Source: Macrostomum lignano (lineage: Eukaryota). Taken from it: a stretch of DNA of 64,000 bases. Position numbers and translations under genes: made by a program. The stretch's first letter is position 1; every line of letters begins with the position of its first letter. The DNA lies in the NCBI GenBank assembly GCA_002269645.1, contig NIVC01000671.1:186001-250000 (forward strand), written 5' to 3'. Of the stretch, positions 23,085 through 55,356 are shown piece after piece. The notes below the pieces were generated by a model. That model made no database searches. It was not told the DNA's origin and saw only the letters and a list, made by a program, of their open reading frames with translations.

Positions 23085-23094
23085 TCAGTCAGTC

Positions 23095-23168
<74 letters not shown>

Positions 23169-23307
23169 TAATCAATCAATCAATTAATCAATCAATTAAT
23201 CAATCAATCAATTAATCAATCAATCAATAAATCAATCGATCGATCAAGCATTCAATAAATCAGTCAGTCAATCAATCAATCCAATCAATCAATCAATCAA
23301 TCAATCA
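23085..23307. repeat. (ATCA)n microsatellite abutting the stop codon of the TIR exon
   Basis: Directly visible. Confidence 0.92.
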
Positions 23308-25733
23308 AGGCGGCCCGGAGATCTGCTGCACCCGCTGCACCAGCCGAGCCAGATTCTTCTTGGCCAGCCGCTCGCTCCCGATGTCTATGGCCGGAATCGC
23401 GGCCAGCCGTTTGCGCAGGCCGGCGGCGCAGCTGGAGTCGGGCGGCCAGGCGCAGAAGGTCAGCAGCACCGGCAGCAGCGGCCTGCGCTGCCTGTAGGCG
23501 GCTTCAATATCCGACTGGCAGTTCTCGCTGCGCAGATATTTTGGCGTGACGGCCAGCAGAACGCAGTGACAGTCGCGCATTGCTTTCTCGATGAACACCT
23601 GCGGATGTTTTGCAATAGATAGGAAACTAAGGGATATCTAGTAATAGGGTGGCGAAGCATTTAGCAAGCAAGGGTTTTAGTTCATTTACATGCTGAACCT
23701 TCTTTGCTGGCGCCCTCATCTGGCACTCAGTTTAGCACACTCATCTGGCAATCAGTTTAGCACACTCATCTGGCAATCAGTTTAGCACACTCATCTGGCA
23801 ATCAGTTTAGCACACTCATCTGGCAATCAGTTTAGCACACTCATCTGGCACTCAGTTTAGCACACTCATCTGGCAATCAGTTTAGCACACTCATCTGGCA
23901 CTCAGTTTAGCACACTCATCTGGCACTCAGTTTAGCACACTCATCTGGCACTCAGTTTAGCACACTCATCTGGCAATCAGTTTAGCACACTCATCTGGCA
24001 CTCAGTTTAGCACACTCATCTGGCACTCAGTTTAGCACACTCATCTGGCACTCAGTTTAGCACACTCATCTGGCACTCAGTTTAGCACACTCATCTGGCA
24101 ATCAGTTTAGCACACTCATCTGGCACTCAGTTTAGCACGCTCATCTGGCAATCAGTTTAGCACACTCATCTGGCACTCAGTTTAGCACGCTCATCTGGCA
24201 CTCAGTTTAGCACACTCATCTGGCACTCAGTTTAGCACACTCATCTGGCACTCAGTTTAGCACACTCATCTGGCACTCAGTTTAGCACGCTCATCTGGCA
24301 CTCAGTTTAGCACACTCATCTGGCACTCAGTTTAGCACACTCATCTGGCAATCAGTTTAGCACACTCATCTGGCACTCAGTTTAGCACACTCATCTGGCA
24401 CTCAGTTTAGCACACTCATCTGGCACTCAGTTTAGGAGAGTGCTAAGAAAGTGCAGCTACTGGTATTTATGATGGAGCTACACAAGAAATATTTATACAG
24501 TTAATATTTTATCTGATGTACTCTAACCGAAGGATTACCCACAAATTAATTATTAGTTACACAGCAGTCCGCCCGCGCTTATTATAAAGTGCATCTCTAA
24601 AAGAAACACCAATTTTGGTTGCCAACCTTTCGACTGCCGTCGTCACGAACGCCTTTCATGATCTGCAAAATAAAAAAAGTCGAGAAAAGTTTGCCAGCAA
24701 GCAGCGAGGTGAAAAAAAACAGTGAACTGTGATTTTTTACGAGAGCTATGATGGAGTTGATTTCTAAGCAAATAAACGAAAGCTTCTGATTTGACTAGCT
24801 GTAATTGCTGGCAAACACTAAAGAAGCGCGCTGTTGAAAAAAAACATTAAAATGGCACGGCTCGGCTCATTGTTTTTATGATTTTACGAGTATTTTGTTA
24901 TTCTCAGCTGACTGTGTAGCAATATGTGTAACAGATATGATAAAATAGATTCATAACACCAAAGAGTCGAGCTGTGCCATGCATTTTTTATGATATTTAG
25001 GTACAGAAAATGTACGTAGAATAAAAATATGACATAGAATCCTAATTTTGTGGACCTAAAACTTTATGAATATCAATAGAGCAATAAGATAGGCACAACA
25101 TATCAAAAGAAGAACATTGGGTCTGCCTCCTATCGAAAGCACTAACAATTTTTGTGCTGAAAAATGAAAACTTCCTATCTCTGTAGCGTATTTTTGGCGA
25201 AAAATGGCCTTCAAAACTTTTTCCACGAAACGCGAGGGTCGTGCCTTGGGGGTTGGCCTTCATGGGCGTGAATGGCCGTGACGAGAGAGTCAACCGGGTT
25301 TACGAAGAAAGTGATAGCAGAGTGTCGCATGCAGTGAAGTGATATTCAATTTATTGGCAAAGCTGAACTGTCAGGTCACTCCAATTACCTTCATGCTGCC
25401 CTCATCAGGACTCTTGTCGGTGTCAAGCTGCACTCGGATTCCGTGGCCAATCAGGAATCGCTTCAGCTCCAGCACAGCCTCGGTGGAGTCCCAGTGATAG
25501 GAGATGAACACGGAGGTCTGTTGAGGCTGCTGGCTGGGCACTGATGGTGCCAAGCTGGACTGTGTACCGGTTCGAGTCCTGATGAAGCCAGGAGAGGCTG
25601 GGTTAGGCTGCTGCGACTGGCTGGATGATGCAGCAGAGTCCAAACTGCGCGCAGGGGCTGCGAAGAAGTTCGGCAGTGTTGCCAGTTGGATTGCAGAGTT
25701 GTTCCAGTTTGCATAACTGGGGTTGGTAAGAGC
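23305..25733 (-). CDS. TIR-domain (TIR_2-type) coding exons; separate gene or alternative 3' end of the TIR-SAM-TIR gene
   Basis: complement join(25389..25733,24627..24662,23305..23598), all phase 0, 224 aa. Reads SVFISYHWD...IRVQLD...AMRDCHCVLLAVTPKYLRSENCQSDIEAAYRQRRPLLPVLL, the canonical TIR beta/alpha pattern. The 5' end is unresolved. Confidence 0.82.
23714..24433. repeat. 25-bp minisatellite (CTCAGTTTAGCACACTCATCTGGCA)n
   Basis: About 28 copies with C/A variants. Confidence 0.95.
24850..25240. repeat. Dispersed repeat, copy 1, with an internal inverted repeat
   Basis: Homologous to 32528-32760 (AAAATAGATTCATAA...GAGC(C/T)GTGCCAT; AACATTGGGTC; TTCCTATCT...GGCGAAAA). 24851-24886 is an inverted copy of 24943-24982. 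Confidence 0.65.
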
Positions 25734-25789: not shown

Positions 25790-27126
25790 ACGGCTCTGAC
25801 ATCCTATCATTGCTGACATATTCTATCTGACATCCTATCATTGCTGACAGATTCTATCTGACATCCTATCATTGCTGACAGATTCTATCTGACATCCTAT
25901 CATTGCTGACAGATTCTATCTGACATTCTATCATTGCTGACCGATTCTATCGACATCCTATCAATGCTGACAGATTCTATCTGACATCCTATCATTGCTG
26001 ACAGATTCTATCTGACATCCTATCATTGCTGACAGATTCTATCTGACATTCTATCATTGCTGACCGATTCTATCGACATCCTATCAATGCTGACAGATTC
26101 TATCTGACATTCTATCATTGCTGACAGATTCTATCTGACATCCTATCATTGCTGACAGATTCTATCGACATCCTATCAATGCTGACAGATTCTATCGACA
26201 TCCTATCAATGCTGACAGATTCTATCTGACATCCTATCAATGCTGACAGATTCTATCTGACATCCTATCATTGCTGACAGATTCTATCGACATCCTATCA
26301 ATGCTGACAGATTCTATCTGACATTCTATCATTGCTGACAGATTCTATCTGACATCCTATCATTGCTGACAGATTCTATCGACATCCTATCAATGCTGAC
26401 AGATTCTATCGACATCCTATCAATGCTGACAGATTTTATCTGACATTCTATCAATGCTGACAGATTCTATCTGACATCCTATCATTGCTGACCGATTCTA
26501 TCGACATCCTATCAATGCTGACAGATTCTATCTGACATCCTATCATTGCTGACAGATTCTATCTGACATTCTATCATTGCTGACAGATTCTATCTGACAT
26601 TCTATCATTGCTGACCGATTCTATCTGACATTCTATCAATGCTGACAGATTCTATCTGACATCCTATCATTGCTGACCGATTCTATCGACATCCTATCAA
26701 TGCTGACAGATTCTATCTGACATCCTATCATTGCTGACAGATTCTATCGACATCCTATCAATGCTGACAGATTCTATCTGACATTCTATCATTGCTGACA
26801 GATTCTATCTGACATCCTATCATTGCTGACAGATTCTATCTGACATTCTATCATTGCTGACCGATTCTATCGACATCCTATCATTGCTGACAGATTCTAT
26901 CTGACATCCTATCATTGCTGACAGATTCTATCTGACATCCTATCATTGCTGACAGATTCTATCTGACATCCTATCATTGCTGACAGATTCTATCTGACAT
27001 CCTATCATTGCTGACAGATTCTATCTGACATCCTATCATTGCTGACAGATTCTATCTGACATCCTATCATTGCTGACAGATTCTATCTGACATCCTATCA
27101 TTGCTGACAGATTCTATCTGACATCC
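25790..27126. repeat. 31-bp minisatellite (TCTATCTGACATCCTATCATTGCTGACAGAT)n
   Basis: About 43 copies with 30-bp variants. Confidence 0.95.
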
Positions 27127-27383
27127 TGGTACAACACAGTGAACACCACCAGTCAAAAATTAATTCTTGGATTCGAAACAAAAATTCGATTATAAATTTT
27201 CCAACCCTGGAGTCACACTTGCCACTCAATTGCTCCGAGAGTTAATGCGCAAGTTCATGGAAAACAAAAGTCTAACAATGAGAGACAGGTCACGCACACG
27301 TATAAATAAAGAAGGAGAGAGTCAATAAAATAAAAGTTCTTTTATAGGCATTATCTGTGTTGATCTAAAAAAACCAAACAAGG

Positions 27384-30300
27384 TCATTGGGCTTTCGGTG
27401 GGTCAGGGGGCGTCGAGCTGGACTCGCGTCTCAGCCACGCCTCATAGTCCATCAGGTAGTGCATGAAGAGCTCGGCTGTAAAGTTCCAATTGAAATTTGA
27501 TTTGTTCGGTGATTGTGTTGTTGGATGTACTTTAGAGTAGCGTCTGATGGCGATCCGCAGCCAGCGAGGAGGAAGGCACACGCTCAATCAATCAGTCAAT
27601 CAATCAATTAACCAATCAATCAATCAATCAATCAATCGATCGATCAATCAATCAATCAATCAATCGATCGATCAATCAATCAATCAATTTTTAATTAATC
27701 AATCAATCAATTAACCAATCAATCAATCAATCAATCAATCGATCGATCAATCAATCAATCAATCAATTAATCAATCAATCAATCAATCAATCGATCGATC
27801 GATCAATCAATCAATCAATCAATCAATTAATCAATCAATCAATCAATCAATCGATCGATCAATCAATCAATCAATCAATTAATCAATCAATCAATCAATT
27901 AATCAATCTATCAATCTATATATCTATCAAGCAATCCATCAATTCATCAACCTATCAATTACGCTCGTAATTAATCAATCAATCAATTAATCAATCAGTC
28001 CATTATACATTTTGCGACCAATTATAGAGGTTTAGGGTTGGACGGATTAGCTTAGCGTATCTCCATCCCAATCTACAATGAATTTTTACAATTATATGTT
28101 CGGTCTAAAGAGTATAATTTTATACAGAATTACTAGAAGCGAGTTCAAGCCAATTAAATTGCAAAGAAATTAATAAACAAAGCCAATGTCGCTTTAAAGT
28201 TGTAGTGAATGTCAATGGAGACGCATATACGATCTCTTTCTCTACGAGCTCTCACAACCCACATCGGCTCACCGGAGGTGTGCGCCAGGTAGCCAGCAGG
28301 TGGCAGCTTTCTGGCCAGCTTGCGCACATAGCTCTGCTCAAGCACCACGGCTGGGTGAGTCCGCTCGGGCGCCACTATGGCCGAGCCGAGCTCGTCCAAG
28401 CTGTCCGCCACCGGCTGGCCGCTGAAATCCAAGCCTTGGGCATCGTCTGAAAGAAGAGAATGAGGCAAAGGAACATCATCTGAATGACGTTAAGATGCAA
28501 CCCGTAGGAGTGTTTGTCTTGATTGACTTTCTGCAAGCAATATGCAACATGCTCGTAGACTGTGCTACCATATCCCCATGACAAACCTGCATGTTGCTAA
28601 CCGATTTAACTTGAAAGGAAAACCCTCTCCTACTTGAGGAGAGTAGCTAGACGTTTCACGTTCAAAATAGGAGGTAAAAAAGTGTACTTAGGCATCACTT
28701 CTAACCTCGATGCGAGCTTTCTGGGTGGGAACGCGGTTTGGAGTGGGATTGGCCATAGACAAAACTCGATATGGAAGAAGTGCAATTTGTTCCCCTGGCC
28801 TATATACCAAGTTGATGTGTCCTAAAGTTGGGACTGACATCGGGGGGGGGGGTTTAACACAGACTATATTGCATTTTCACAGCCAATTGGGCCTAGGAGC
28901 GAGTAATTTTATCCTTAGCGGGAGAATCGAGCTGTTGAAGAATTGATTTTCATAGTCTATGGCCCAAGCTTAATCCTTAGCGGGAGAATCGAGCTGTTGA
29001 AGAATTTCTTTTCATTGTCTATGGCCCAAGCCTAATTCTTAGCGGGAGAATCGAGCTGTTAAAGAATTTCTTTTTATTGTCTATGGCCCAAACCTAATCC
29101 TTAGCGGGAGAATCGAGCTGTTGAAGAATTGCTTTTCATAGTCTATGGCCCAAGCTTAATCCTTAGCGGGAGAATCGAGCTGTTGAAGAATTGCTTTTCA
29201 TAGTCTATGGCCCAAGCTTAATCCTTAGCGGGAGAATCGAGCTGTTGAAGAATTGCTTTTCATAGTCTATGGCCCAAGCTTAATCTTTAGCGGAAGAATC
29301 GAGCTGTTGAAGAATTGCTTTTCATTGTCTATGGCCCAAAGGGGGGGGGGTCAGTGGTGCAAGCAACTTGAGAATTTGGGCCGCGCAATTAATCCTTTCC
29401 ACAGTATATCTTTCTTGTATTTGCTGAAGCAGCGTCTGCAAATGGTTGACATGCCAACATACAATTGGCATTGACACTTTGATTTCAGTTGAAACAAATC
29501 AAAACGGACAAAGGCAAAAGCAGGGATGAGACAAGGATTACAGATTATACAACTACAGGGAGAATAAAATGCGAACAGCCTTCTAATGCCTAAAAAATGT
29601 TTCCCATCGTAAAGTTCAGCAGATCAGGAGACGGTTAGTACGCAAATGCATTGTTTGCTTGCGTCGACTGTATCTGATGGGGGGGGGTTCTGAGCTGCTG
29701 AAGGGATGCATGCTCGTACTTTGGCATTTATCATGGGTGCCAATTTTGTGGCAACATCAGACCCAGCCAGGCCGACACACCACGGACAGGCAACAAAGCA
29801 ACTCACACAGCAGAGCCCGCAGCGCCGGCCGCAGCTGAAACCAGCAGTTGGTGAGGAACAGCACGATAACCCGACGGCCCAGCCATTCGGCGAACATCAC
29901 GCAGTGATAGAACACCGCCGATCTCGCGCTGTGCTCGGTGAGCAGCACCAGCACGTGACCGCAGGCGGCCATGGCGGGCCCGTTCTTGCGCAGAAAGTCG
30001 TCCCTGGACTCGCCGAGCTCTTCAACGTGGCTAACGCGAACTCGGCGACGCTCCAGCGCGAGTTTCAACACGTCCCGAGTTTTGGCGTCCCGGCGCGGAT
30101 CGCAGACGAGGAACACGCAGCCGGGGCGCGGCTTCGTCAGGCGGCACCGGCCGCTCCAGCTGTCACGCTGCTCAGCCTGCAGGCGGTTCAGAATCTCTCT
30201 TGTCAGCTTCTTCCTAGACAGCTGCACGTCCACCCGAAGGGAGCCGGCCAGGTCAGCGTCCGTCAGGCTGTAGGCCAGGAAGCCGTCCACTCCCTGCTCG

Positions 30301-31102
30301 GCAAACTGCTGCCTGTAGAACTCGCGAATGTCCAGACTGTGCAGCCACTCCTGCAGATCGTTGACAGTCCAGGCCAGGAAGCGCTTGCTGGCGAACTGTC
30401 CGGTGTAGCCCGGTGCCAGCAGCGGCTCCGGCAGCAGCGGCCGGAAGTCGGTGGCGAATCGCTCCAGCTGGGGCGCCAGTCTGGCTGAGCACTGGGCAAT
30501 CAGCTCAGACTCGGCCGCTCCGCGGCGACGCGATTCGGCAATGTCGACCAGCGACGCCGCTGACGCATCGCCGTCGCCGCGCCGTATCGCCTCGGCCAGG
30601 ATTGGGGGACACTGGCGCTCGAGGCCGCTTTGACCTTGGGCGTCGAGCAGTACGGCGAACAGATGCAGCGAGGCACGATTGTCGTGCAGCCGCTCCGCCA
30701 GGGTGCGCATGGTGTGCAGCGCCAGCCGGCTGGAGAAGAAGGACTCGGACAGGAACAGCACAGCGGCGAAGCACTTCTCGGCCGCCTCCAGGCTGCAGGC
30801 CACCCAGGCGCTGCTCTCGAAGAGGCCTTCGTCTTTGTCGAACCAGACGCTGTCAGCCAGGCCAACGGCCTTGAGCTCCTTCACCAGGCGGGCGATGAAG
30901 CGCTTTTCTAGGAAACCAGCCTCCGGGCTGTACGCTACAAATATGCTGGCCTTCTCGCGGCTGTTGCCAGTCGAGTCGGCGGTCACTTCAGGCGCCGCCG
31001 CCTCAGCCGAAGTTGACGCCGCTGCATCGTCTTCTGTCAGCTCCGCCGGCTGACTGCCGATTCCGTCGTGGCTCTCAGAGGCCGCCAGCTTGCCGTAGCG
31101 AT
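27384..31102 (-). CDS. TIR-SAM-TIR protein, 5'-incomplete, at least 519 aa
   Basis: complement join(29807..31102,28273..28446,27384..27475), all phase 1. TIR1: SIFVAYS...VWFDKD...FAAVLFLSESFFSS. SAM: WTVNDLQEWLHSLDIREFYRQQFAEQGVDGFLAYSLTDADL. TIR2: VFLVCD...HVLVLLTEHSARS...GRRVIVLFL...RALLY|DAQGLDF. The first exon seen starts in phase 1 without an ATG. Confidence 0.85.
27585..27995. repeat. (ATCA)n microsatellite with GATC and ATTA variants
   Basis: Directly visible. Confidence 0.9.
28908..29340. repeat. 62-bp tandem repeat, about 7 copies (TTAGCGGGAGAATCGAGCTGTTGAAGAATT...GTCTATGGCCCAAGCTTAATCC)
   Basis: TTAGCG recurs at 29101, 29163 and 29225. Confidence 0.92.
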
Positions 31103-31399
31103 CTGGTAGAACGGGGCGTTGGGGAAAACAGAAAATATTGGGGGGAGAAAAACACAGACTGAAGCGCAGGGGGCCGTCCGCTTGAGCGGAGGCGGGAATG
31201 GAGATTTAATAATGGCTTTTTTGGCCGCCTTTATTCAATTATTCAAAAAGCAAAGGCTGGGCATGTATGATTAGAGAGAGAGTCGGAGGGCCTGCGATGC
31301 GGGCGGGTGCCTATAGTTGCACCGTTCGCTTCTCCGTCCTGGGATGTTTTTTATCGTTTCTCTGCCTCCCCTGTGTCTGCCTTTCTCCTCTCTATCTAT

Positions 31400-32528
31400 A
31401 TTCAGCCAGGAAAGACAGGATAGACAGTATAGACAGGATAGACAGGATAGACAGGATAGACAGGATTCAGCCAGGATAGACAGGATAGACAGGATAGACA
31501 GGATAGATAGGATAGACAGGATAGACAGGATAGACAGGATAGACAGGATAGACAGGATAGACAGGATAGACAGGATAGACAGGATAGACAGGATAGACAG
31601 GATAGACAGGATAGACAGGATAGACAGGATAGACAGGATAGATAGGATAGACAGGATAGATAGGATAGACAGGATAGACAGGATAGACAGGATAGATAGG
31701 ATAGACAGGATAGACAGGATAGACAGGATAGACAGGTTAGATAGGATAGACAGGATACTAGACAGGATAGACAGGATAGATAGGATAGACAGGATAGACA
31801 GGATAGATAGGATAGACAGGATAGACAGGATAGACAGGATAGACAGGATAGACAGGATAGACAGGATAGACAGGATAGACAGGATAGACAGGATAGACAG
31901 GATAGACAGGATAGACAGGATAGACAGGATAGATAGGATAGACAGGATAGATAGGATAGACAGGATAGACAGGATAGACAGGATAGACAGGATAGACAGG
32001 ATAGATAGGATAGACAGGATAGACAGGATAGACAGGATAGACAGGATAGACAGGATAGACAGGATAGACAGGATAGACAGGATAGACAGGATAGATAGGA
32101 TAGACAGGATAGATAGGATAGACAGGATAGACAGGATAGACAGGATAGATAGGATAGACAGGATAGACAGGATAGACAGGATAGACAGGATAGATAGGAT
32201 AGACAGGATACTAGACAGGATAGACAGGATAGATAGGATAGACAGGATAGACAGGATAGATAGGATAGACAGGATAGACAGGATAGACAGGATAGATAGG
32301 ATAGACAGGATAGACAGGATAGACAGGATAGACAGGATAGATAGGATAGACAGGATACTAGACAGGATAGACAGGATAGATAGGATAGACAGGATAGACA
32401 GGATAGATAGGATAGACAGGATAGACAGGATAGACAGGATAGACAGGATAGACAGGATAGACAGGATAGACAGGATAGACAGGATAGACAGGATAGACAG
32501 GATAGACAGGATAGACAGGATAGACAGG
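31400..32528. repeat. 9-bp satellite (GACAGGATA)n
   Basis: About 1.1 kb with GATAGGATA variants. Confidence 0.97.
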
Positions 32529-32760
32529 AATGACAAAATAGATTCATAAAGCAAAAAGCCGAGCCGTGCCATTTCAATTAATGGTTTTTAGGCACATGAC
32601 ATGTTTAATTGTACATATCGAAACATGAACATTGGGTCGGCCTTCTATCAAAAGTAATAACAATTTTAAAAATATGAAAAAAAGTGAAAAGTTCCTATCT
32701 ACGTAGTGTATTTTGTCGGCGAAAACCAGCCTTCCTTAACATTTTCTAAGAAATATAGTT
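32528..32760. repeat. Dispersed repeat, copy 2, diverged homologue of 24940-25240
   Basis: Shares colinear blocks with copy 1. Confidence 0.6.
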
Positions 32761-33194
32761 TCTCGTCCTTCTACTTTGGTAGTCCTTAGATCAGGCATGT
32801 ATAAAATAAGAATTTAATACAGCCAACTTCGAATATTTATAGATCGTTTTGTACTTGTAATTGAAGAAACAGGCTGTACGTTTGAAAACTGATCATTGAT
32901 CAAGGACTACTTAAGAAGACTTCAGTGGTCCTTGACAGTGTTTTTCTCGGAAACAAGACTCTCTGTCTCTTTATGAAATTGATCTGCTCAAGCTCATGTG
33001 CGTGCTTCTGTAGCAGTCTCCGCCATAGCTTAGCTTTGACAGTTAAACCAAGGCTTACAGATTCCAAACCCCTCAGATTTTATAATTGGGTTCGTTCTCC
33101 TATCAGTTTTTCTTGGCATTCCAGTTTTTATCCTGCAGACTGCGTGATCCGTGATCATTCGCTTGACTGTATCACGCTTGCAGGCAATATAAAG

Positions 33195-36100
33195 ACTCAC
33201 AGATCATGTTCTCTTTCAGTATGCAGAGCAGCCTAGAGACTCACAGATCATGTTCTCTTTCAGTATACAGAGAGCAGCCTAGAGACTCACAGATCATGTT
33301 CTCTTTCAGTATACAGAGAGCAGCCTAGAGACTCACAGATCATGTTCTCTTTCAGTATGCAGAGCAGCCTAGAGACTCACAGATCATGTTCTCTTTCAGT
33401 ATACAGAGAGCAGCCTAGAGACTCACAGATCATTTTCTCTTTCAGTATACAGAGTAGCCTAGAGACTCACAGATCATGTTCTCTTTCAGTATACAGAGCA
33501 GCCTAGAGACTCACAGATCATGTTCTCTTTCAGTATGCAGAGCAGCCTAGAGACTCACAGATCATGTTCTCTTTCAGTATACAGAGAGCAGCCTAGAGAC
33601 TCACAGATCATGTTCTCTTTCAGTATACAGAGCAGCCTAGAGACTCACAGATCATGTTCTCTTTCAGTATGTAGAGCAGCCTAGAGACTCACAGATCATG
33701 TTCTCTTTCAGTATACAGAGCAGCCTAGAGACTCACAGATCATGTTCTCTTTCAGTATACAGAGCAGCCTAGAGACTCACAGATCATGTTCTCTTTCAGT
33801 ATGTAGAGCAGCCTAGAGACTCACAGATCATGTTCTCTTTCAGTATACAGAGTAGCCTAGAGACTCACAGATCATGTTCTCTTTCAGTATGCAGAGAGCA
33901 GCCTAGAGACTCACAGATCATGTTCTCTTTCAGTATACAGAGTAGCCTAGAGACTCACAGATCATGTTCTCTTTCAGTATACAGAGCAGCCTAGAGACTC
34001 ACAGATCATGTTCTCTTTCAGTATACAGAGCAGCCTAGAGACTCACAGATCATGTTCTCTTTCAGTATACAGAGCAGCCTAGAGACTCACAGATCATGTT
34101 CTCTTTCAGTATGTAGAGCAGCCTAGAGACTCACAGATCATGTTCTCTTTCAGTATACAGAGTAGCCTAGAGACTCACAGATCATGTTCTCTTTCAGTAT
34201 GCAGAGAGCAGCCTAGAGACTCACAGATCATGTTCTCTTTCAGTATACAGAGTAGCCTAGAGACTCACAGATCATGTTCTCTTTCAGTATACAGAGCAGC
34301 CTAGAGACTCACAGATCATGTTCTCTTTCAGTATACAGAGCAGCCTAGAGACTCACAGATCATGTTCTCTTTCAGTATGTAGAGCAGCCTAGAGACTCAC
34401 AGATCATGTTCTCTTTCAGTATACAGAGTAGCCTAGAGACTCACAGATCATGTTCTCTTTCAGTTTGCAGAGCAGCCTAGAGACTCACAGATCATGTTCT
34501 CTTTCAGTATACAGAGCAGCCTAGAGACTCACAGATCATGTTCTCTTTCAGTATGCAGAGAGCAGCCTAGAGACTCACAGATCATGTTCTCTTTCAGTAT
34601 ACAGAGTAGCCTAGAGACTCACAGATCATGTTCTCTTTCAGTATACAGAGCAGCCTAGAGACTCACAGATCATGTTCTCTTTCAGTATACAGAGAGCAGC
34701 CTAGAGACTCACAGATCATGTTCTCTTTCAGTATACAGAGCAGCCTAGAGACTCACAGATCATGTTCTCTTTCAGTATGTAGAGCAGCCTAGAGACTCAC
34801 AGATCATGTTCTCTTTCAGTATACAGAGCAGCCTAGAGACTCACAGATCATGTTCTCTTTCAGTATACAGAGCAGCCTAGAGACTCACAGATCATGTTCT
34901 CTTTCAGTATACAGAGCAGCCTAGAGACTCACAGATCATGTTCTCTTTCAGTATACAGAGCAGCCTAGAGACTCACAGATCATGTTCTCTTTCAGTATAC
35001 AGAGCAGCCTAGAGACTCACAGATCATGTTCTCTTTCAGTATACAGAGCAGCCTAGAGACTCACAGATCATGTTCTCTTTCAGTATGTAGAGCAGCCTAG
35101 AGACTCACAGATCATGTTCTCTTTCAGTATACAGAGTAGCCTAGAGACTCACAGATCATGTTCTCTTTCAGTATACAGAGCAGCCTAGAGACTCACAGAT
35201 CATGTTCTCTTTCAGTATACAGAGCAGCCTAGAGACTCACAGATCATGTTCTCTTTCAGTATACAGAGCAGCCTAGAGACTCACAGATCATGTTCTCTTT
35301 CAGTATACAGAGCAGCCTAGAGACTCACAGATCATGTTCTCTTTCAGCATACAGAGCAGCCTAGAGACTCACAGATCATGTTCTCTTTCAGTATGTAGAG
35401 CAGCCTAGAGACTCACAGATCATGTTCTCTTTCAGTATACAGAGCAGCCTAGAGACTCACAGATCATGTTCTCTTTCAGTATACAGAGCAGCCTAGAGAC
35501 TCACAGATCATGTTCTCTTTCAGTATACAGAGCAGCCTAGAGACTCACAGATCATGTTCTCTTTCAGTATACAGAGCAGCCTAGAGACTCACAGATCATG
35601 TTCTCTTTCAGTATACAGAGCAGCCTAGAGACTCACAGATCATGTTCTCTTTCAGTATACAGAGCAGCCTAGAGACTCACAGATCATGTTCTCTTTCAGT
35701 ATGTAGAGCAGCCTAGAGACTCACAGATCATGTTCTCTTTCAGTATACAGAGTAGCCTAGAGACTCACAGATCATGTTCTCTTTCAGTATACAGAGCAGC
35801 CTAGAGACTCACAGATCATGTTCTCTTTCAGTATACAGAGCAGCCTAGAGACTCACAGATCATGTTCTCTTTCAGTATACAGAGCAGCCTAGAGACTCAC
35901 AGATCATGTTCTCTTTCAGTATACAGAGCAGCCTAGAGACTCACAGATCATGTTCTCTTTCAGTATACAGAGCAGCCTAGAGACTCACAGATCATGTTCT
36001 CTTTCAGTATACAGAGCAGCCTAGAGACTCACAGATCATGTTCTCTTTCAGTATACAGAGCAGCCTAGAGACTCACAGATCATGTTCTCTTTCAGTATGT

Positions 36101-39100
36101 AGAGCAGCCTAGAGACTCACAGATCATGTTCTCTTTCAGTATACAGAGTAGCCTAGAGACTCACAGATCATGTTCTCTTTCAGTATGCAGAGAGCAGCCT
36201 AGAGACTCACAGATCATGTTCTCTTTCAGTATACAGAGTAGCCTAGAGACTCACAGATCATGTTCTCTTTCAGTATACAGAGCAGCCTAGAGACTCACAG
36301 ATCATGTTCTCTTTCAGTATACAGAGCAGCCTAGAGACTCACAGATCATGTTCTCTTTCAGTATGTAGAGCAGCCTAGAGACTCACAGATCATGTTCTCT
36401 TTCAGTATACAGAGTAGCCTAGAGACTCACAGATCATGTTCTCTTTCAGTTTGCAGAGCAGCCTAGAGACTCACAGATCATGTTCTCTTTCAGTATACAG
36501 AGCAGCCTAGAGACTCACAGATCATGTTCTCTTTCAGTATGCAGAGAGCAGCCTAGAGACTCACAGATCATGTTCTCTTTCAGTATACAGAGTAGCCTAG
36601 AGACTCACAGATCATGTTCTCTTTCAGTATACAGAGCAGCCTAGAGACTCACAGATCATGTTCTCTTTCAGTATACAGAGAGCAGCCTAGAGACTCACAG
36701 ATCATGTTCTCTTTCAGTATACAGAGCAGCCTAGAGACTCACAGATCATGTTCTCTTTCAGTATGTAGAGCAGCCTAGAGACTCACAGATCATGTTCTCT
36801 TTCAGTATACAGAGCAGCCTAGAGACTCACAGATCATGTTCTCTTTCAGTATACAGAGCAGCCTAGAGACTCACAGATCATGTTCTCTTTCAGTATACAG
36901 AGCAGCCTAGAGACTCACAGATCATGTTCTCTTTCAGTATACAGAGCAGCCTAGAGACTCACAGATCATGTTCTCTTTCAGTATACAGAGCAGCCTAGAG
37001 ACTCACAGATCATGTTCTCTTTCAGTATGTAGAGCAGCCTAGAGACTCACAGATCATGTTCTCTTTCAGTATACAGAGCAGCCTAGAGACTCACAGATCA
37101 TGTTCTCTTTCAGTATACAGAGTAGCCTAGAGACTCACAGATCATGTTCTCTTTCAGTATACAGAGCAGCCTAGAGACTCACAGATCATGTTCTCTTTCA
37201 GTATACAGAGCAGCCTAGAGACTCACAGATCATGTTCTCTTTCAGTATACAGAGCAGCCTAGAGACTCACAGATCATGTTCTCTTTCAGTATACAGAGCA
37301 GCCTAGAGACTCACAGATCATGTTCTCTTTCAGCATACAGAGCAGCCTAGAGACTCACAGATCATGTTCTCTTTCAGTATGTAGAGCAGCCTAGAGACTC
37401 ACAGATCATGTTCTCTTTCAGTATACAGAGCAGCCTAGAGACTCACAGATCATGTTCTCTTTCAGTATACAGAGCAGCCTAGAGACTCACAGATCATGTT
37501 CTCTTTCAGTATGTAGAGCAGCCTAGAGACTCACAGATCATGTTCTCTTTCAGTATACAGAGTAGCCTAGAGACTCACAGATCATGTTCTCTTTCAGTAT
37601 GCAGAGAGCAGCCTAGAGACTCACAGATCATGTTCTCTTTCAGTATACAGAGTAGCCTAGAGACTCACAGATCATGTTCTCTTTCAGTATACAGAGCAGC
37701 CTAGAGACTCACAGATCATGTTCTCTTTCAGTATACAGAGCAGCCTAGAGACTCACAGATCATGTTCTCTTTCAGTATGTAGAGCAGCCTAGAGACTCAC
37801 AGATCATGTTCTCTTTCAGTATACAGAGTAGCCTAGAGACTCACAGATCATGTTCTCTTTCAGTTTGCAGAGCAGCCTAGAGACTCACAGATCATGTTCT
37901 CTTTCAGTATACAGAGCAGCCTAGAGACTCACAGATCATGTTCTCTTTCAGTATGCAGAGAGCAGCCTAGAGACTCACAGATCATGTTCTCTTTCAGTAT
38001 ACAGAGTAGCCTAGAGACTCACAGATCATGTTCTCTTTCAGTATACAGAGCAGCCTAGAGACTCACAGATCATGTTCTCTTTCAGTATACAGAGAGCAGC
38101 CTAGAGACTCACAGATCATGTTCTCTTTCAGTATACAGAGCAGCCTAGAGACTCACAGATCATGTTCTCTTTCAGTATGTAGAGCAGCCTAGAGACTCAC
38201 AGATCATGTTCTCTTTCAGTATACAGAGCAGCCTAGAGACTCACAGATCATGTTCTCTTTCAGTATACAGAGCAGCCTAGAGACTCACAGATCATGTTCT
38301 CTTTCAGTATACAGAGCAGCCTAGAGACTCACAGATCATGTTCTCTTTCAGTATACAGAGCAGCCTAGAGACTCACAGATCATGTTCTCTTTCAGTATAC
38401 AGAGCAGCCTAGAGACTCACAGATCATGTTCTCTTTCAGTATGTAGAGCAGCCTAGAGACTCACAGATCATGTTCTCTTTCAGTATACAGAGCAGCCTAG
38501 AGACTCACAGATCATGTTCTCTTTCAGTATACAGAGTAGCCTAGAGACTCACAGATCATGTTCTCTTTCAGTATACAGAGCAGCCTAGAGACTCACAGAT
38601 CATGTTCTCTTTCAGTATACAGAGCAGCCTAGAGACTCACAGATCATGTTCTCTTTCAGTATACAGAGCAGCCTAGAGACTCACAGATCATGTTCTCTTT
38701 CAGTATACAGAGCAGCCTAGAGACTCACAGATCATGTTCTCTTTCAGCATACAGAGCAGCCTAGAGACTCACAGATCATGTTCTCTTTCAGTATGTAGAG
38801 CAGCCTAGAGACTCACAGATCATGTTCTCTTTCAGTATACAGAGCAGCCTAGAGACTCACAGATCATGTTCTCTTTCAGTATACAGAGCAGCCTAGAGAC
38901 TCACAGATCATGTTCTCTTTCAGTATACAGAGTAGCCTAGAGACTCACAGATCATGTTCTCTTTCAGTATACAGAGCAGCCTAGAGACTCACAGATCATG
39001 TTCTCTTTCAGTATACAGAGCAGCCTAGAGACTCACAGATCATGTTCTCTTTCAGTATACAGAGCAGCCTAGAGACTCACAGATCATGTTCTCTTTCAGT

Positions 39101-40118
39101 ATGTAGAGCAGCCTAGAGACTCACAGATCATGTTCTCTTTCAGTATACAGAGTAGCCTAGAGACTCACAGATCATGTTCTCTTTCAGTATACAGAGCAGC
39201 CTAGAGACTCACAGATCATGTTCTCTTTCAGTATACAGAGCAGCCTAGAGACTCACAGATCATGTTCTCTTTCAGTATACAGAGCAGCCTAGAGACTCAC
39301 AGATCATGTTCTCTTTCAGTATGTAGAGCAGCCTAGAGACTCACAGATCATGTTCTCTTTCAGTATACAGAGTAGCCTAGAGACTCACAGATCATGTTCT
39401 CTTTCAGTATGCAGAGAGCAGCCTAGAGACTCACAGATCATGTTCTCTTTCAGTATACAGAGCAGCCTAGAGACTCACAGATCATGTTCTCTTTCAGTAT
39501 GTAGAGCAGCCTAGAGACTCACAGATCATGTTCTCTTTCAGTATACAGAGTAGCCTAGAGACTCACAGATCATGTTCTCTTTCAGTATACAGAGCAGCCT
39601 AGAGACTCACAGATCATGTTCTCTTTCAGTATACAGAGCAGCCTAGAGACTCACAGATCATGTTCTCTTTCAGTATGTAGAGCAGCCTAGAGACTCACAG
39701 ATCATGTTCTCTTTCAGTATGCAGAGTAGCCTAGAGACTCACAGATCATGTTCTCTTTCAGTATACAGAGCAGCCTAGAGACTCACAGATCATGTTCTCT
39801 TTCAGTATACAGAGCAGCCTAGAGACTCACAGATCATGTTCTCTTTCAGTATGTAGAGCAGCCTAGAGACTCACAGATCATGTTCTCTTTCAGTATACAG
39901 AGCAGCCTAGAGACTCACAGATCATGTTCTCTTTCAGTATACAGAGCAGCCTAGAGACTCACAGATCATGTTCTCTTTCAGTATGCAGAGCAGCCTAGAG
40001 ACTCACAGATCATGTTCTCTTTCAGTATACAGAGCAGCCTAGAGACTCACAGATCATATTCTCTTTCAGTATACAGAGCAGCCTAGAGACTCGCAGATCA
40101 TGTTCTCTTTCAGCATGC
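33195..40118. repeat. 44-bp satellite (GAGCAGCCTAGAGACTCACAGATCATGTTCTCTTTCAGTATACA)n, about 6.9 kb and 155 copies
   Basis: Period 44 with 46-bp variants; no unique spacers. Confidence 0.98.
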
Positions 40119-40984
40119 AGAGTTCTTCGCTTACCTTGATCAACCTACTGAATGGACTTGGCTGTTTTGAGATATTGCAATTTTTTAGTTAATAATGAAG
40201 CTACAGCTGGAAAACTTTACTAACGCATTTGACCAGTTGGCCATTAGGTCCTCCAATACAAACTATTTAGCTCAAATCCTTCATCAAAATAGAATTTTAA
40301 ATCTAATATGCTTACGATTAGAGGTACTGCTTTTGGTTACTAAGAGGGGCAGAGGGGTGAGAGAGCGAGAGAAAGACGCTAAAGAAACCAAAGCAATGCT
40401 AAGCTGATACGAAAGAGAGAAGTAGGGAGGGAGGAAGGCGCTGTGCTGGCCAAGGAGACCTGCAACGAATAAGAAGACTTGGCTGACCAGACTGCCTGGT
40501 CCAGATTCTCGGTCGAGTACTCCATGACTTAGGCTGGGCCTTGAGTTGAGTCGCCTGCACAGACAGAGCATAGCTGCATTGTGGATTGGGCAGCAACCCC
40601 CCTCCCCAGCACAGCCCGTGAAGAAGTTCAATGCATAATCGAGAGAGATAGAGAGGGAGAGGGAGAGTAGAGACGGGACCGCTTGCCTCCCCCCACGCCC
40701 CAGCAGCCGACTTGAGACAGAGTCTGCGTCTGCTGTATCTGGGGACAACAAATCAGCCCCCCTTGAGTAGCTGCCAGACAGTTACCTGTAGTCTATCTCT
40801 ATCTGCTCTATGCATATCTATCCAATATGCAAACGCACACAAAGCAGTGTAAGTTTTAAGCTAATATGACTGAACACCAAAGCAAGGAATTATTCACTAC
40901 AATGACTTTTTTGCTCCGATAAAACTCTAATTAAATTATGAAAGCTAGAAGCGTATTATTCTGAACTTTCTGTCTCCGCCGTCT

Positions 40985-42402: not shown

Positions 42403-42873
42403 ATGGTCGGCCTTGACCCGTACGAGGAGCGCCTGCTCATAGCGATGCTTGGCGGCGGAGTCGCCCTGATCTTCGCCATCGCCCTGGGCATCATCTGCTG
42501 CCGCAAGTATCGCCTAGACAGAAGCGGCGGAGGCGGCGGGGGCGGCAAGAACCGGATGTGGGCGGTGCAGCAGCAGAGGCAGCTGATGTTCCAGAGGCAG
42601 CCGGGGATGCAGCAGGCCTACCTGCCAACCGGTCATCAGACCAACGTAAACATGGACCCGGTTTACCTGGACCCGGCCAGGGGAATTAACCTGGCTGGCG
42701 GGCCGCCGCCACCGCAGCATCCGCAGGTGCAATCAAACTTGAATCCCACGTACGCTTCGGCGGTGCCGCAGGGCACCTTCCAGCAGCAGCCGCCGTCCAT
42801 GAGGCAGGCGGACAACACAGCTTATACCAGCATGCCGTATGGCCGCCCGAGCTACTCATCGCATCAGGTGTAA
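42403..42873 (+). CDS. Small single-pass membrane protein with a Gln/Pro/Tyr-rich cytoplasmic tail, 156 aa
   Basis: GC-rich ORF with hydrophobic LLIAMLGGGVALIFAIALGII followed by CCRKYR. Acceptor TTGCAG| at 42395. The preceding candidate exon (donor at 41863) has an in-frame stop, so it is probably 5'UTR. Confidence 0.8.
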   Translation: MVGLDPYEERLLIAMLGGGVALIFAIALGIICCRKYRLDRSGGGGGGGKNRMWAVQQQRQLMFQRQPGMQQAYLPTGHQTNVNMDPVYLDPARGINLAGGPPPPQHPQVQSNLNPTYASAVPQGTFQQQPPSMRQADNTAYTSMPYGRPSYSSHQV

Positions 42874-54200: not shown

Positions 54201-55356
54201 GAGCAGGAAGCGCTCAAAGATCCCAACGCTGCCACTCAACAGCTGGGATCTGAAAAATTTTTCAGCATCGATTTTTATGGGAGTTGAGTTGTCCCATAAT
54301 GGGATTTTAGACATCCCATACTGGGATCTTGAATTTCTCATAATGGGATCTTGGATTTTCTAAAATGGGATCTTGGATATCCCATATTGGGATCTTGGAT
54401 ATTTCATATTGGGACCTTGGATATCCCATCATGAGATCTTGGATATCCCATAATGGGATCTTGGATATTCTAAAATGGGATCTTGGATATCCCATATTGG
54501 GATCTTGGATATTTCATATTGGGACCTTGGATATCCCATAATGGGATCTTGGATATCCCATAATGGGATCTTGGACATCTCATAATGGGATCTGGGATTT
54601 CCTGAGATGATCCTAGATGATCCATGATTACTCGTGATGGATTTTCTCGAGATGGGGTCCGAAATTTCCTGAGATAGGAGTTTCTAAGTTGGTATCTGGG
54701 ATTTCTTGCGATGGGATCCGTGTTGGAATAAGGGGAGATCTGAGAGATTTTTTGAGATTGTGATCCGAGATCCCTCATGATGAGGCATTGGGATGCAGTT
54801 CATAATCGCGGACATGCCTGAGTTCCACGCAGGCCCGCTGGTGCGGGCAGTTGATTCGCAGGTAGCCCAGCTGGCCCTCCGAGCTGAGCCGGAGGCTCTC
54901 CATCTTCCAGCCGCCAGGCAGGCGTCCCTCGGCCTCCGCAGGCGGCAGGCTGGCCCCGGCCGGCCGCAGGAAGGCCACAGACCGAGGCGCGGCATGCCGC
55001 AGCCTCTCCCTGGCCTGGTGCAGCAGCTCGTCATCTCGCAGAGCCACGGGAAAGCTCAGGTAGTGAACTTCGGTCAGCCGGTCAAACCGGACGCACGAGG
55101 CGTTGATGACGGCCTCGACGGGCTCGGTGGTTGGCAGGGACAGCAGCGGCTCCAGCAGGAAGTGGCCGCGCCGGTCCAGGCGCTGGTGCACAAACACGGG
55201 CACCCCGGCGAGTTCCAGGGTGGTCCAGTGGCGCAGCAGGCCGGGGCTCGGCCTCGTACAGTTGCCGCTGTCGCCGGCTTCAACGAATTGTTCAGCGGCC
55301 AAGGTGGCGGAGACACCAGTGAGGAGCAGCAGCAGGGCGTTAAGAACTGGCGCCAT
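45242..55356 (-). CDS. Secreted ~1435-aa protein: signal peptide, six tandem copies of an unrecognised ~200-aa domain, linker, C-terminal C-type lectin domain
   Basis: complement join(54814..55356,53845..54242,52997..53254,51775..52434,50542..51156,49530..50108,48318..48926,47053..47264,45242..45675) = 4308 nt, phase-consistent and stop-free. N-terminus [21 protein letters not shown]. Lectin domain: YFFS...[24 protein letters not shown]...WIGM...NCVAM...W...C...FVCQ. The first donor (CAT|GTCCGC) is the weakest junction. Confidence 0.85.
45715..47012. repeat. 22-bp minisatellite (GACAGCTAGATTACAGATAGAT)n followed by an 11-bp (TGACAGGCAGG)n
   Basis: Fills the last intron of the lectin gene. 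Confidence 0.93.
47608..48215. repeat. 20-bp minisatellite (TGCTCAGATCCCACATCCTG)n
   Basis: Directly visible, intronic. Confidence 0.9.
48975..49515. repeat. 13-bp homogeneous minisatellite (GAGATCCCAATCC)n
   Basis: Fills about 90% of intron 48927-49529. Confidence 0.97.
50150..50440. repeat. 7-bp repeat (GATCAGG/GATCAGA)n
   Basis: Intronic, degenerate at the edges. Confidence 0.85.
51290..51728. repeat. 16-bp minisatellite (GGATACCAGGTTGCTA)n
   Basis: Directly visible, intronic. Confidence 0.95.
52489..52625. repeat. Tandem duplication of a 62-bp unit
   Basis: CCAATCAGATTAGAGAT...TTCAGGACGCGTGAGGTGGGTGTCCTTTGACTTT occurs twice. Confidence 0.8.
52895..52947 (+). repeat. Short interstitial telomere-like tract, degenerate (TTAGGG)n
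   Basis: GGGGTTAGGGTTAGGGTTTAGGTTAGGGTAGGGTTAGAGTTAGGGTAGGGTTAG. Confidence 0.75.
53460..53755. repeat. ~14-bp repeat (TGGGATTTGGGAAC / TGGGATTTGGGATC)n
   Basis: Intronic. Confidence 0.88.
54285..54600. repeat. ~22-bp repeat (GGATCTTGGATATCCCATAATG)n
   Basis: Intronic; contains the dyad ATCCCAT-A-ATGGGAT. Confidence 0.85.

What the first reader, a model, noticed from the sequence alone, without database searches (positions are those of the whole stretch)
27384..31102. TIR-SAM-TIR architecture: a SAM domain between two TIR domains
Seen: one 1.3-kb exon encodes a TIR, a clear SAM and most of a second TIR, and the next exon completes that TIR in frame. No transmembrane, LRR, death or ARM region is visible. 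Established: SARM1 is ARM-SAM-SAM-TIR and uses SAM oligomerisation to cluster its TIRs; MyD88 is death-TIR. This layout matches neither. Inference: a cytosolic self-assembling TIR scaffold from an uncharacterised invertebrate innate-immune or cell-death pathway.
Basis: partly seen in the sequence, partly recalled or inferred. Interest (0 to 1): 0.8.

Follow-up and report, generated by a model that had tools for sequence, protein, structure and literature searches.

The report
Flatworm TIR-SAM-TIR-TIR scaffold gene

Summary
The window is Macrostomum lignano DNA. The gene is on the minus strand and is already in GenBank as hypothetical protein BOX15_Mlig013155g1.

TIR1 and SAM pass Pfam's curated cut-offs. 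The second TIR does not (E=0.036), but an AlphaFold2 model of it matches solved TIR structures.
- **What was missed:** The annotated, homology-supported gene continues through three more exons to 23305 and adds a third, canonical TIR. The real layout is TIR-SAM-TIR-TIR.
It is not in that model. It is unusually conserved among paralogues, so it may be an alternative terminal exon.
- **Family:** Members occur in cnidarians, molluscs, annelids, echinoderms, a hemichordate, lungfish and paddlefish. None is characterised.
- **Link to SARM1:** The closest solved relative of the SAM is SARM1 SAM1.
- **Catalytic residues:** Relatives almost always have Glu at the NADase position of TIR1 and TIR2. This protein has Thr130 and Cys400, and TIR3 has Asp.

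Most likely it is a SAM-clustered, non-catalytic TIR scaffold. The N-terminus is unresolved.

The parts
29807..31102 (-). Coding exon 1 (1296 nt). Its first two bases complete a codon begun upstream. It encodes the N-terminal low-complexity stretch, TIR1, the SAM and about two thirds of TIR2.
   Evidence: The acceptor ctaccag| and donor |gtgagt are canonical and the frame is open. Pfam finds TIR_2 and SAM_2. The three paralogous loci have no indels downstream of the acceptor but several upstream of it.
28273..28446 (-). Coding exon 2 (174 nt). It completes TIR2 (strand E, helix E and two further helices).
   Evidence: It is in phase, with tttcag| and |gtgagc. tblastn with relatives hits it. 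It is identical to PAA78695.1.
25389..25657 (-). Coding exon 3 (269 nt). It encodes a Ser/Gln/Pro-rich linker and the start of TIR3 (VFISYHWD...).
   Evidence: tblastn with P0001, P0003 and P0008 hits it. Splice sites are tcgcag| and |gtaatt. It is identical to PAA78695.1.
24627..24662 (-). Coding exon 4, a 36-nt micro-exon (IMKGVRDDGSRK) inside TIR3.
   Evidence: tblastn hits it. Splice sites are ttgcag| and |gttggc. It is identical to PAA78695.1.
23305..23598 (-). Coding exon 5. It encodes the rest of TIR3 and the stop codon TGA (23307-23305).
   Evidence: tblastn gives 99% identity to P0001 and 33-37% to annelid and hemichordate relatives. TIR_2 scores E=7.5e-16.
27384..27475 (-). It is not in the annotated CDS. 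It may be an alternative 3' terminal exon giving a TIR-SAM-TIR isoform.
   Evidence: It is in phase behind a ttacag| acceptor. It has no counterpart in relatives or in PAA78695.1. Against paralogue L002 it shows one synonymous change and no indel in 92 nt. Unique intronic DNA differs at 7.7% (binomial P=0.006).
30453..30959 (-). TIR1 (model residues about 48-216).
   Evidence: Pfam TIR_2 covers residues 53-154. The family profile hits MyD88 TIR at 4e-5, then RUN1 and TLR2. The AF2 model has pLDDT 88.7 and Foldseek finds plant TIR domains at E=5e-5 and above.
30189..30374 (-). SAM domain (residues 243-304), most like SARM1 SAM1.
   Evidence: SAM_2 scores 27.5 bits against a cut-off of 20.5. The family SAM profile hits SARM1 SAM1 and TIR-1 at E=4e-13 to 5e-13, and the next family at 3e-9.
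28273..30143 (-). TIR2 (residues about 320-489), a cryptic TIR split by intron 1.
   Evidence: It scores below Pfam's threshold. hhalign against TIR3 gives E=2.3e-5. AF2 and Foldseek support a TIR fold. Database fragments holding only TIR2 carry no Pfam hit.
23377..25511 (-). TIR3 (residues 539-665), split over exons 3-5.
   Evidence: Pfam TIR_2 scores 59.2 bits, E=7.5e-16. The family profile's best solved relative is the SARM1 TIR, at about 1e-3.
30711..30713 (-). Codon for Thr130, at the TIR1 position that aligns in register with the catalytic Glu of TIR NADases (RUN1 E100, SARM1 E642).
   Evidence: This position is Glu in 75 of the 77 aligned TIR1 domains with a residue there. The window has Thr. 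The register comes and from the known S-x-x-x-x-x-E motif.
29901..29903 (-). Codon for Cys400, at the equivalent catalytic position of TIR2.
   Evidence: This position is Glu in 49 of the 57 aligned TIR2 domains with a residue there. It is Cys in all M. lignano copies, Gln in lungfish and paddlefish, and Asp or Val in two others.
23509..23511 (-). Codon for Asp621, at the TIR3 position that HMMER aligns with SARM1 E642.
   Evidence: The profile alignment places 'kD' opposite SARM1 'KE'. This position is Asp in all family TIR3 domains.
31103..31165 (-). Pyrimidine-rich tract and AG acceptor of exon 1. The start codon must lie further upstream and was not found.
   Evidence: Sequence. Exon 1 has no in-frame ATG before residue 131. 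Among paralogues, indels start immediately upstream of the acceptor.

Best explanation
The locus is the M. lignano gene BOX15_Mlig013155g1. It has five coding exons on the minus strand (31102 to 23305) and an unidentified 5' exon.

It encodes a soluble protein of at least 688 residues laid out as TIR1 - SAM - TIR2 - TIR3. It belongs to an uncharacterised four-domain family that predates the split between cnidarians and bilaterians.

Inferred mechanism:
- The SARM1-SAM1-like SAM domain drives homo-oligomerisation.
- This holds three TIR domains per protomer at high local concentration.
- The TIRs can then nucleate TIR-TIR assemblies with each other or with other TIR proteins.

Almost all relatives keep a Glu at the NADase catalytic position in TIR1 and TIR2, so the family is probably ancestrally NAD+-cleaving. 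In the M. lignano copies these residues are Thr130 and Cys400, and TIR3 has Asp. This protein therefore most likely acts as a non-catalytic scaffold, adaptor or regulator rather than as an NAD+ consumer.

Shown: gene structure, domain identities, family membership, residue states and purifying selection. Inferred: oligomerisation, scaffold role and loss of catalysis.
For: **Gene model**
- All splice sites are canonical.
- Residues 131-688 are 100% identical to PAA78695.1.
- The window is the same sequence as NIVC01000671.1.

**Domains**
- TIR1, SAM and TIR3 pass Pfam's curated cut-offs.
- TIR2 is supported by hhalign, AF2 and Foldseek.
- The TIR1 fold is confirmed on the window's own sequence.

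**Family**
- Relatives align colinearly at 31-36% identity over the full-length model.
- They come from bivalves, gastropods, annelids, echinoderms, a hemichordate and Nematostella.
- Lungfish and paddlefish also have members.

**Other points**
- The SAM is closest to SARM1 SAM1 and TIR-1 (E=4e-13).
- Catalytic position: TIR1 has Glu in 75 of 77 and TIR2 in 49 of 57. The window has Thr and Cys, and TIR3 has Asp.
- pN/pS against paralogue L002 is 0.30, with no stop or indel in 2069 nt.
- No transmembrane segment is present.
Against: - No functional or expression data were available.
- Oligomerisation is inferred only from SAM similarity, and this protein has one SAM where SARM1 uses a tandem pair.
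- The catalytic-position assignment rests on sequence register and profile alignments, not on a residue-level structural superposition.
- Asp621 in TIR3, or some other residue, could still support catalysis.
- The N-terminus is missing, so an unseen upstream domain cannot be excluded for this species. Full-length relatives have only disordered N-termini.
- The spliced-leader ATG is out of frame at the 31103 acceptor.
Confidence: 0.55

Rival explanations
1. It is an active SARM1-like NAD+-consuming enzyme. SAM-driven clustering would activate TIR catalysis, with Asp621 of TIR3 or a non-canonical residue doing the chemistry.
For: The SAM is SARM1-like. The TIR2 and TIR1 models match NADase-type TIRs such as SPARTA, SARM1, RUN1, RPS4 and AbTir. 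Glu is conserved across the family in TIR1 and TIR2. One UniRef entry for a bivalve member is auto-named ADP-ribosyl cyclase.
Against: All M. lignano copies have Cys at the TIR2 position, and all three loci encode Thr at the TIR1 position. TIR3 has Asp. In the HMMER alignment TIR3 also lacks the four residues, including the Trp, that precede E642 in SARM1.
Confidence: 0.15
2. The reader's three-exon product (TIR-SAM-TIR with a 30-residue tail ending at 27384) is a real additional short isoform made from an alternative terminal exon.
For: The exon is in phase with a canonical acceptor. It shows one synonymous change and no indel in 92 nt, against 7.7% mismatches in unique intronic DNA (P=0.006). 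It is the only such conserved block outside the tandem arrays. NCBI lists mollusc X2 isoforms that end after TIR2 (P0002, P0006).
Against: It is absent from all three GenBank models of the paralogues. The tail has no similarity to any relative. No transcript data were available. The block could be conserved for another reason.
Confidence: 0.3
3. The locus is a decaying, non-functional duplicate in the polyploid M. lignano genome.
For: Both conserved glutamates are lost. No start codon was found, and the GenBank CDS begins at an internal Met that would cut TIR1 in half. The protein is the most divergent member of the alignment.
Against: pN/pS is 0.30. All three paralogues keep intact reading frames and share the same substitutions. 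The part of exon 1 upstream of the annotated Met has no indels and still aligns with relatives from other phyla.
Confidence: 0.05

Closest known systems
SARM1 / C. elegans TIR-1 / Drosophila dSarm (ARM-SAM-SAM-TIR NAD+ hydrolases)
   Same: It is the only characterised animal protein that combines SAM and TIR. The family's SAM profile is closest to SARM1 SAM1 by four orders of magnitude. SARM1's TIR is the best solved sequence relative of TIR3 and among the best structural matches of TIR2. Both are cytosolic, and clustering by SAM is probably shared.
   Different: This protein has no ARM autoinhibitory region and one SAM instead of a tandem pair. It has three TIRs, one of them N-terminal to the SAM. 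In this protein no TIR has Glu at the catalytic position, whereas relatives have Glu in TIR1 and TIR2.
MyD88 (death-TIR adaptor)
   Same: MyD88's TIR is the best solved sequence relative of TIR1 (E=4e-5). Both lack Glu at the catalytic position, which is Gln in MyD88 in that alignment. That fits a scaffold role.
   Different: This protein has no death domain, and it has additional SAM and TIR domains. By structure, the TIR1 model matches plant TIRs better than MyD88.
ecTIR-DC families (evolutionarily conserved cytosolic TIR-domain proteins of invertebrates; Gerdol et al. 2017, as cited in PMC6321704 and PMC8662601)
   Same: It is a cytosolic multi-domain TIR protein conserved across many non-model phyla, well represented in bivalves, and of unknown function. 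This family was probably catalogued there.
   Different: I could not read that paper, so the family number is unverified. Those families are described as lacking vertebrate members, but this one occurs in lungfish and paddlefish.
NADase-type TIR domains of plant NLRs (RPS4, RUN1, RPP1, Roq1) and prokaryotic SPARTA TIR-APAZ
   Same: They are the best structural matches for the TIR1 and TIR2 models. Relatives share the S-x(5)-E register of the catalytic Glu.
   Different: They sit in unrelated domain contexts. Sequence identity is only 11-19%. The window protein lacks the Glu.
Long (1200-1500 aa) animal proteins with tandem TIR3-like domains
   Same: Their TIRs match the family's TIR3 profile at E=1e-18 to 1e-27.
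   Different: They carry Glu where this family's TIR3 has Asp. They have no SAM, TIR1 or TIR2. Their source organisms are unknown.

Membership tests
TIR domain (Pfam TIR_2, PF13676) - TIR1 | Sequence profile score above the curated cut-off, and a five-stranded flavodoxin-like TIR fold | tested here: met
   Exon 1 alone scores 34.8 bits, attributable to TIR1, against a cut-off of 28. The AF2 model has pLDDT 88.7, and the top 15 Foldseek PDB matches are all plant TIR domains.
TIR domain - TIR2 (middle domain) | Sequence profile score above the Pfam curated cut-off | tested here: not met
   It scores 15 bits against a cut-off of 28, E=0.036. The PDB profile search finds no TIR. Fragments holding only TIR2 have no Pfam hit.
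TIR domain - TIR2 (middle domain) | TIR fold, and homology to a bona fide TIR by profile-profile comparison | tested here: met
   The AF2 model has pLDDT 79 and a (beta-alpha)x5 topology. The Foldseek top 14 matches are all TIR domains, E=2.4e-5 to 1.4e-3. hhalign against TIR3 gives E=2.3e-5 at 76% probability.
TIR domain - TIR3 | Sequence profile score above the curated cut-off | tested here: met
   TIR_2 scores 59.2 bits, E=7.5e-16.
SAM domain (PF07647 / PF00536) | Sequence profile score above the curated cut-off | tested here: met
   SAM_2 scores 27.5 bits against a cut-off of 20.5. The family profile hits SARM1 SAM1 at 4e-13.
SARM1 orthologue | N-terminal ARM-repeat autoinhibitory region | tested here: not met
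   Pfam finds no ARM or HEAT hit in the window protein or in four full-length relatives at E<=1. A TIR sits N-terminal to the SAM instead. The extreme N-terminus of the M. lignano protein is unknown.
SARM1 orthologue | Tandem SAM1-SAM2 | tested here: not met
   There is a single SAM hit per protein.
SARM1 orthologue | Single C-terminal TIR with catalytic Glu (E642) | tested here: not met
   There are three TIRs. The C-terminal one has Asp621 opposite E642.
TIR NAD+ hydrolase / cyclase | Glu at the catalytic position at the start of helix C | tested here: not met
   The window has Thr130, Cys400 and Asp621. Relatives have Glu in TIR1 (75 of 77) and TIR2 (49 of 57). The register comes from alignments, not from a superposition.
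TIR NAD+ hydrolase / cyclase | Measured NAD+ cleavage | not testable with these tools
   This needs a biochemical assay.
MyD88 | N-terminal death domain | tested here: not met
   Pfam finds no death-domain hit.
Conserved TIR1-SAM-TIR2-TIR3 family (for example XP_052774240.1 of Mya arenaria, the Nematostella 'predicted protein' P0014, XP_071510154.1 of Diadema) | Colinear four-domain alignment over the full length | tested here: met
   The first search gives E=1e-63 to 1e-87 and 33-38% identity over 85-92% of the query. Family HMMs find all four domains in order in 15 full-length proteins and in the window model.
ecTIR-DC (Gerdol et al. 2017) | Assignment to one of the numbered families | not testable with these tools
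   The paper is not held. Citing papers give no architecture for a SAM-containing family.

The most novel reading that the evidence does not exclude
The TIR1-SAM-TIR2-TIR3 family is a second animal lineage of SAM-clustered TIR enzymes that lacks the ARM domain. It would be related to SARM1 through its SAM and would carry two potentially catalytic TIRs per chain. It is conserved from cnidarians to some vertebrates (lungfish, paddlefish). It would produce NAD+-derived signals or deplete NAD+ in an unstudied immune or cell-death pathway. The M. lignano copies would then be natural pseudoenzymes that have kept only the scaffold function. Lungfish and paddlefish would have partly gone the same way, with Gln in TIR2.
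Probability: 0.3. Interest if true: 0.7.

Novelty: new variant of a known kind. Interest (0 to 1): 0.45.

Why it matters
SARM1 is the only animal protein known to use SAM oligomerisation to switch on a TIR NADase, and it is a drug target in axon degeneration.

A second, widely conserved SAM-plus-TIR family would offer a natural comparison for how clustering controls TIR activity. It has a SARM1-like SAM, no ARM brake and three TIRs, two of them with the catalytic Glu in most species. It might also reveal a new NAD+-based signalling route in animals.

M. lignano is amenable to RNAi and transgenesis. Its copies have lost both glutamates, so they could separate scaffold functions from enzymatic ones.

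The practical value of this window is smaller. The gene is already deposited as a hypothetical protein, and its 5' end is unresolved.

Tried and rejected
- **Repeat family search.** A word-index search with the full-length alignment returned no new members. Searching with the TIR2 profile returned mostly unnamed exon fragments.
- **TIR2 sequence search against PDB.** It found no TIR, so I relied on hhalign and structure prediction.
- I used database relatives, and for TIR2 the 98%-identical paralogue P0001.
- **Search for the 5' exon.**
  - Exon 1 has no in-frame ATG before residue 131.
  - No GC-rich island lies between 31103 and 40500.
  - The candidate ATG-to-donor scan gave only weak donors; the best in-phase one is 40571-40460, CAG|GTCTCC.
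  - The M. lignano spliced leader ends in ATG (PMC8629364), but at the 31103 acceptor it is out of frame. It would be in frame only at the weaker AG at 31086-31085.
  - The N-terminus is left unresolved.
- **Pseudogene.** Rejected, because pN/pS is 0.30 and the frames are intact in three paralogues.
- **C-type lectin exon as part of this gene.** The exon at 45242-45676 on the minus strand ends in a stop codon. A plus-strand ORF (42403-42873) lies between it and this gene. I did not pursue it.
- **Literature.** The ecTIR-DC paper is not held. Other searches and two TIR surveys describe no TIR-SAM-TIR-TIR family.
- **Bacterial promoter and terminator scan**. It is irrelevant to a eukaryotic locus.
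Full report
**What the sequence is**

The window has introns, microsatellites and GC-rich exons in AT-rich surroundings. The window is the same sequence as GenBank contig NIVC01000671.1. The gene lies on the minus strand.

**Checking the observation**

- Exon 1 runs from 31102 to 29807, between ctaccag| and |gtgagt.
- Exon 2 runs from 28446 to 28273, in phase.

- Exon 1 alone scores 34.8 bits on Pfam TIR_2 (cut-off 28), and the three-exon protein gives E=6.6e-9. SAM_2 scores 27.5 bits (cut-off 20.5).
- An AlphaFold2 model of the window's own TIR1 with 11 relatives has pLDDT 88.7 and pTM 0.87. Its best PDB matches are plant TIR domains: RPS4, Roq1, SNC1, RPP1 and RUN1.
- The second TIR is not detectable at Pfam's threshold (15 bits, E=0.036). 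A profile of it finds no solved TIR by sequence.
- That profile does align with the family's third TIR (hhalign E=2.3e-5, probability 76%, 127 columns).
- An AF2 model of the 98%-identical paralogue has pLDDT 79 and five beta-alpha units. Foldseek's top 14 PDB matches are all TIR domains, including SPARTA TIR-APAZ, SARM1, RPS4/RRS1, RPP1, RUN1 and Cat1, at E=2.4e-5 to 1.4e-3.

So the second TIR is real but cryptic. About 45 database fragments that hold only this domain carry no Pfam annotation.

tblastn with relatives shows that the gene continues. The remaining exons are 25657-25389, a 36-nt exon at 24662-24627, and 23598-23305. All have canonical splice sites. They encode a linker and a third, canonical TIR (TIR_2 E=7.5e-16).

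The five-exon model gives 688 residues. Residues 131-688 are identical to PAA78695.1 (BOX15_Mlig013155g1). The layout is therefore TIR1 (about residues 48-216), SAM (243-304), TIR2 (about 320-489) and TIR3 (539-665).

No transmembrane segment is present. Pfam finds no LRR, death or ARM domain in this protein or in full-length relatives.

The block 27475-27384 is in phase and ends in a stop codon. It is absent from the deposited model and has no counterpart in relatives.

It is nevertheless unusually conserved.
- Against paralogue L002 it shows one synonymous change and no indel in 92 nt.
- Unique intronic DNA differs at 7.7% and has many indels, giving a binomial P of 0.006.
- It is the only such block outside the tandem arrays.

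NCBI also lists mollusc isoforms that end after TIR2. An alternative terminal exon that yields a TIR-SAM-TIR isoform is therefore possible (about 0.3) but unproven.

**The N-terminus**

Exon 1 has no in-frame ATG before residue 131, where the GenBank CDS starts. That start would cut TIR1 in half.

The upstream part of exon 1 is nonetheless very likely translated.
- It aligns well with relatives from other phyla.
- Among three paralogues it has no indels, whereas indels begin immediately upstream of the acceptor.

So a start codon must come from further upstream, and I could not find it.
- Upstream lie a 9-bp repeat array and a 6.9-kb array of a 44-bp unit.
- The exon scan gave only weak candidates.
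- The M. lignano spliced leader ends in ATG (PMC8629364). At the 31103 acceptor it would be out of frame.

**The family**

Colinear relatives align at 31-36% identity over the full-length model.
- They occur in bivalves, gastropods, the annelids Owenia and Dimorphilus, a crinoid, a brittle star, sea urchins, a sea cucumber, a hemichordate and Nematostella.
- A profile search of 1.84 billion representatives found 127 proteins at E<=1e-30. They include full-length members, many exon-sized fragments, and some long multi-TIR proteins that match only through TIR3.
- Lungfish (XP_043921818.1, XP_043917895.1) and paddlefish (XP_041102628.1) carry it. The family is therefore not restricted to invertebrates.
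- No named arthropod, nematode, teleost or tetrapod member was seen.
- All named members are annotated as uncharacterised.

M. lignano has at least three near-identical copies. pN/pS between two of them is 0.30, with intact frames.

**How it probably works**

The family's SAM profile matches SARM1 SAM1 and C. elegans TIR-1 at E=4e-13. That is four orders of magnitude better than the next family, liprin-beta. By established knowledge, SARM1's SAM domains form the oligomer that brings its TIRs together. The same role is the simplest inference here, although this protein has one SAM rather than two.

Established knowledge also says TIR NADases need a Glu at the start of helix C (SARM1 E642, RUN1 E100). 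The state of that position in this family is as follows.

| Domain | Relatives | Window protein |
|---|---|---|
| TIR1 | Glu in 75 of 77 | Thr130 |
| TIR2 | Glu in 49 of 57 | Cys400 |
| TIR3 | Asp in all family members | Asp621 |

- Gln replaces the TIR2 Glu in lungfish and paddlefish.
- In the HMMER alignment, TIR3 also lacks the Trp-containing turn that precedes E642 in SARM1.

I therefore think the family is ancestrally a SAM-clustered TIR enzyme, and that the flatworm copies act as non-catalytic scaffolds or adaptors. This is inference. The register comes from alignments and not from a structural superposition, and nothing was assayed.

**Comparison with known systems**

The protein is not a SARM1 orthologue. 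It has no ARM region, a single SAM, three TIRs and no C-terminal catalytic Glu. It is not MyD88, because it has no death domain.

It fits the description of the conserved cytosolic TIR proteins catalogued in bivalves (ecTIR-DC, cited in PMC6321704 and PMC8662601). That paper was not available. The held literature, including a survey of TIR groups (PMC7075850), does not describe this layout.

**Verdict**

The interpretation as a self-assembling cytosolic TIR scaffold is reasonable. "TIR-SAM-TIR" should read "TIR-SAM-TIR-TIR". The gene is already deposited and belongs to a broad, uncharacterised family. This copy is a poor candidate for NAD+ depletion.

Interest is moderate. The family deserves study, while the locus itself adds mainly the natural loss of both glutamates.

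Noticed in passing
window 33193-40122: A 44-bp unit is repeated about 157 times (6.9 kb, 96% matches) just upstream of the gene. The two paralogous loci hold only about 570 bp and 217 bp of it, so the array has expanded greatly at this copy.
   Followed up: partly
window 31407-32529: A 9-bp tandem repeat (CAGGATAGA, about 124 copies) lies immediately upstream of exon 1's acceptor region.
   Followed up: partly
window 25795-27127, 23715-24435, 28911-29339: Three introns of the gene carry minisatellites: 31 bp x 43 in intron 2, 25 bp x 29 in intron 4, and 62 bp x 7 in intron 1. (TCAA)n runs lie at 27584-27997 and directly after the stop codon at 23085-23308.
   Followed up: partly
window 45242-45676 (minus strand): An open frame encodes a C-type lectin domain (Pfam Lectin_C, E=5e-11) and ends in a stop codon. 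It is probably the last exon of the neighbouring upstream gene.
   Followed up: partly
window 49526-55356 (minus strand): Several ORFs of about 190 residues lie in tandem and share motifs such as F-x-[IL]-EP-[LI]-[FL]. None has a Pfam match. They may be repeated domains of one large gene, or a tandem family, upstream of the lectin exon.
   Followed up: no
window 4103-6484 (plus strand): A 793-residue open frame in one piece, GC-rich, has no Pfam match. It is probably a large exon of an unrelated gene.
   Followed up: no
window 42403-42873 (plus strand): A 156-residue ORF has one hydrophobic stretch followed by a Gly run and a Gln/Pro-rich tail, with no Pfam match. It lies between the TIR gene and the lectin exon on the opposite strand.
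   Followed up: no
relatives P0035, P0049 (Protopterus annectens) and P0040 (Polyodon spathula): Lungfish and paddlefish carry members of this family as partial or split gene models. Both have Gln instead of Glu at the TIR2 catalytic position. Conserved invertebrate TIR families are usually described as absent from vertebrates.
   Followed up: partly
relatives P0022-P0033 and others: About 30 database proteins stop some 37 residues into TIR2. This suggests a conserved exon boundary there in other species. In M. lignano the first exon runs about 70 residues further.
   Followed up: no
P0208 (UniRef A0A1I8IUA5, M. lignano): A mis-spliced fragment of this same gene is named 'Radical SAM protein' in UniRef. 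This is an annotation error that confuses the sterile-alpha-motif SAM with S-adenosylmethionine.
   Followed up: partly
P0021 (MetaClust, 688 aa) and P0130 (Bryopsis sp., 673 aa): P0021 shows the order TIR3-TIR1-SAM-TIR2, which is either a fused tandem gene model or a permuted form. A green-alga protein gives weak TIR1-SAM-TIR1-SAM matches.
   Followed up: no
relatives P0087-P0160: Many proteins of 1200-1500 residues carry two or three TIR3-like domains. They have Glu where this family's TIR3 has Asp. Their other domains and source organisms are unknown.
   Followed up: no
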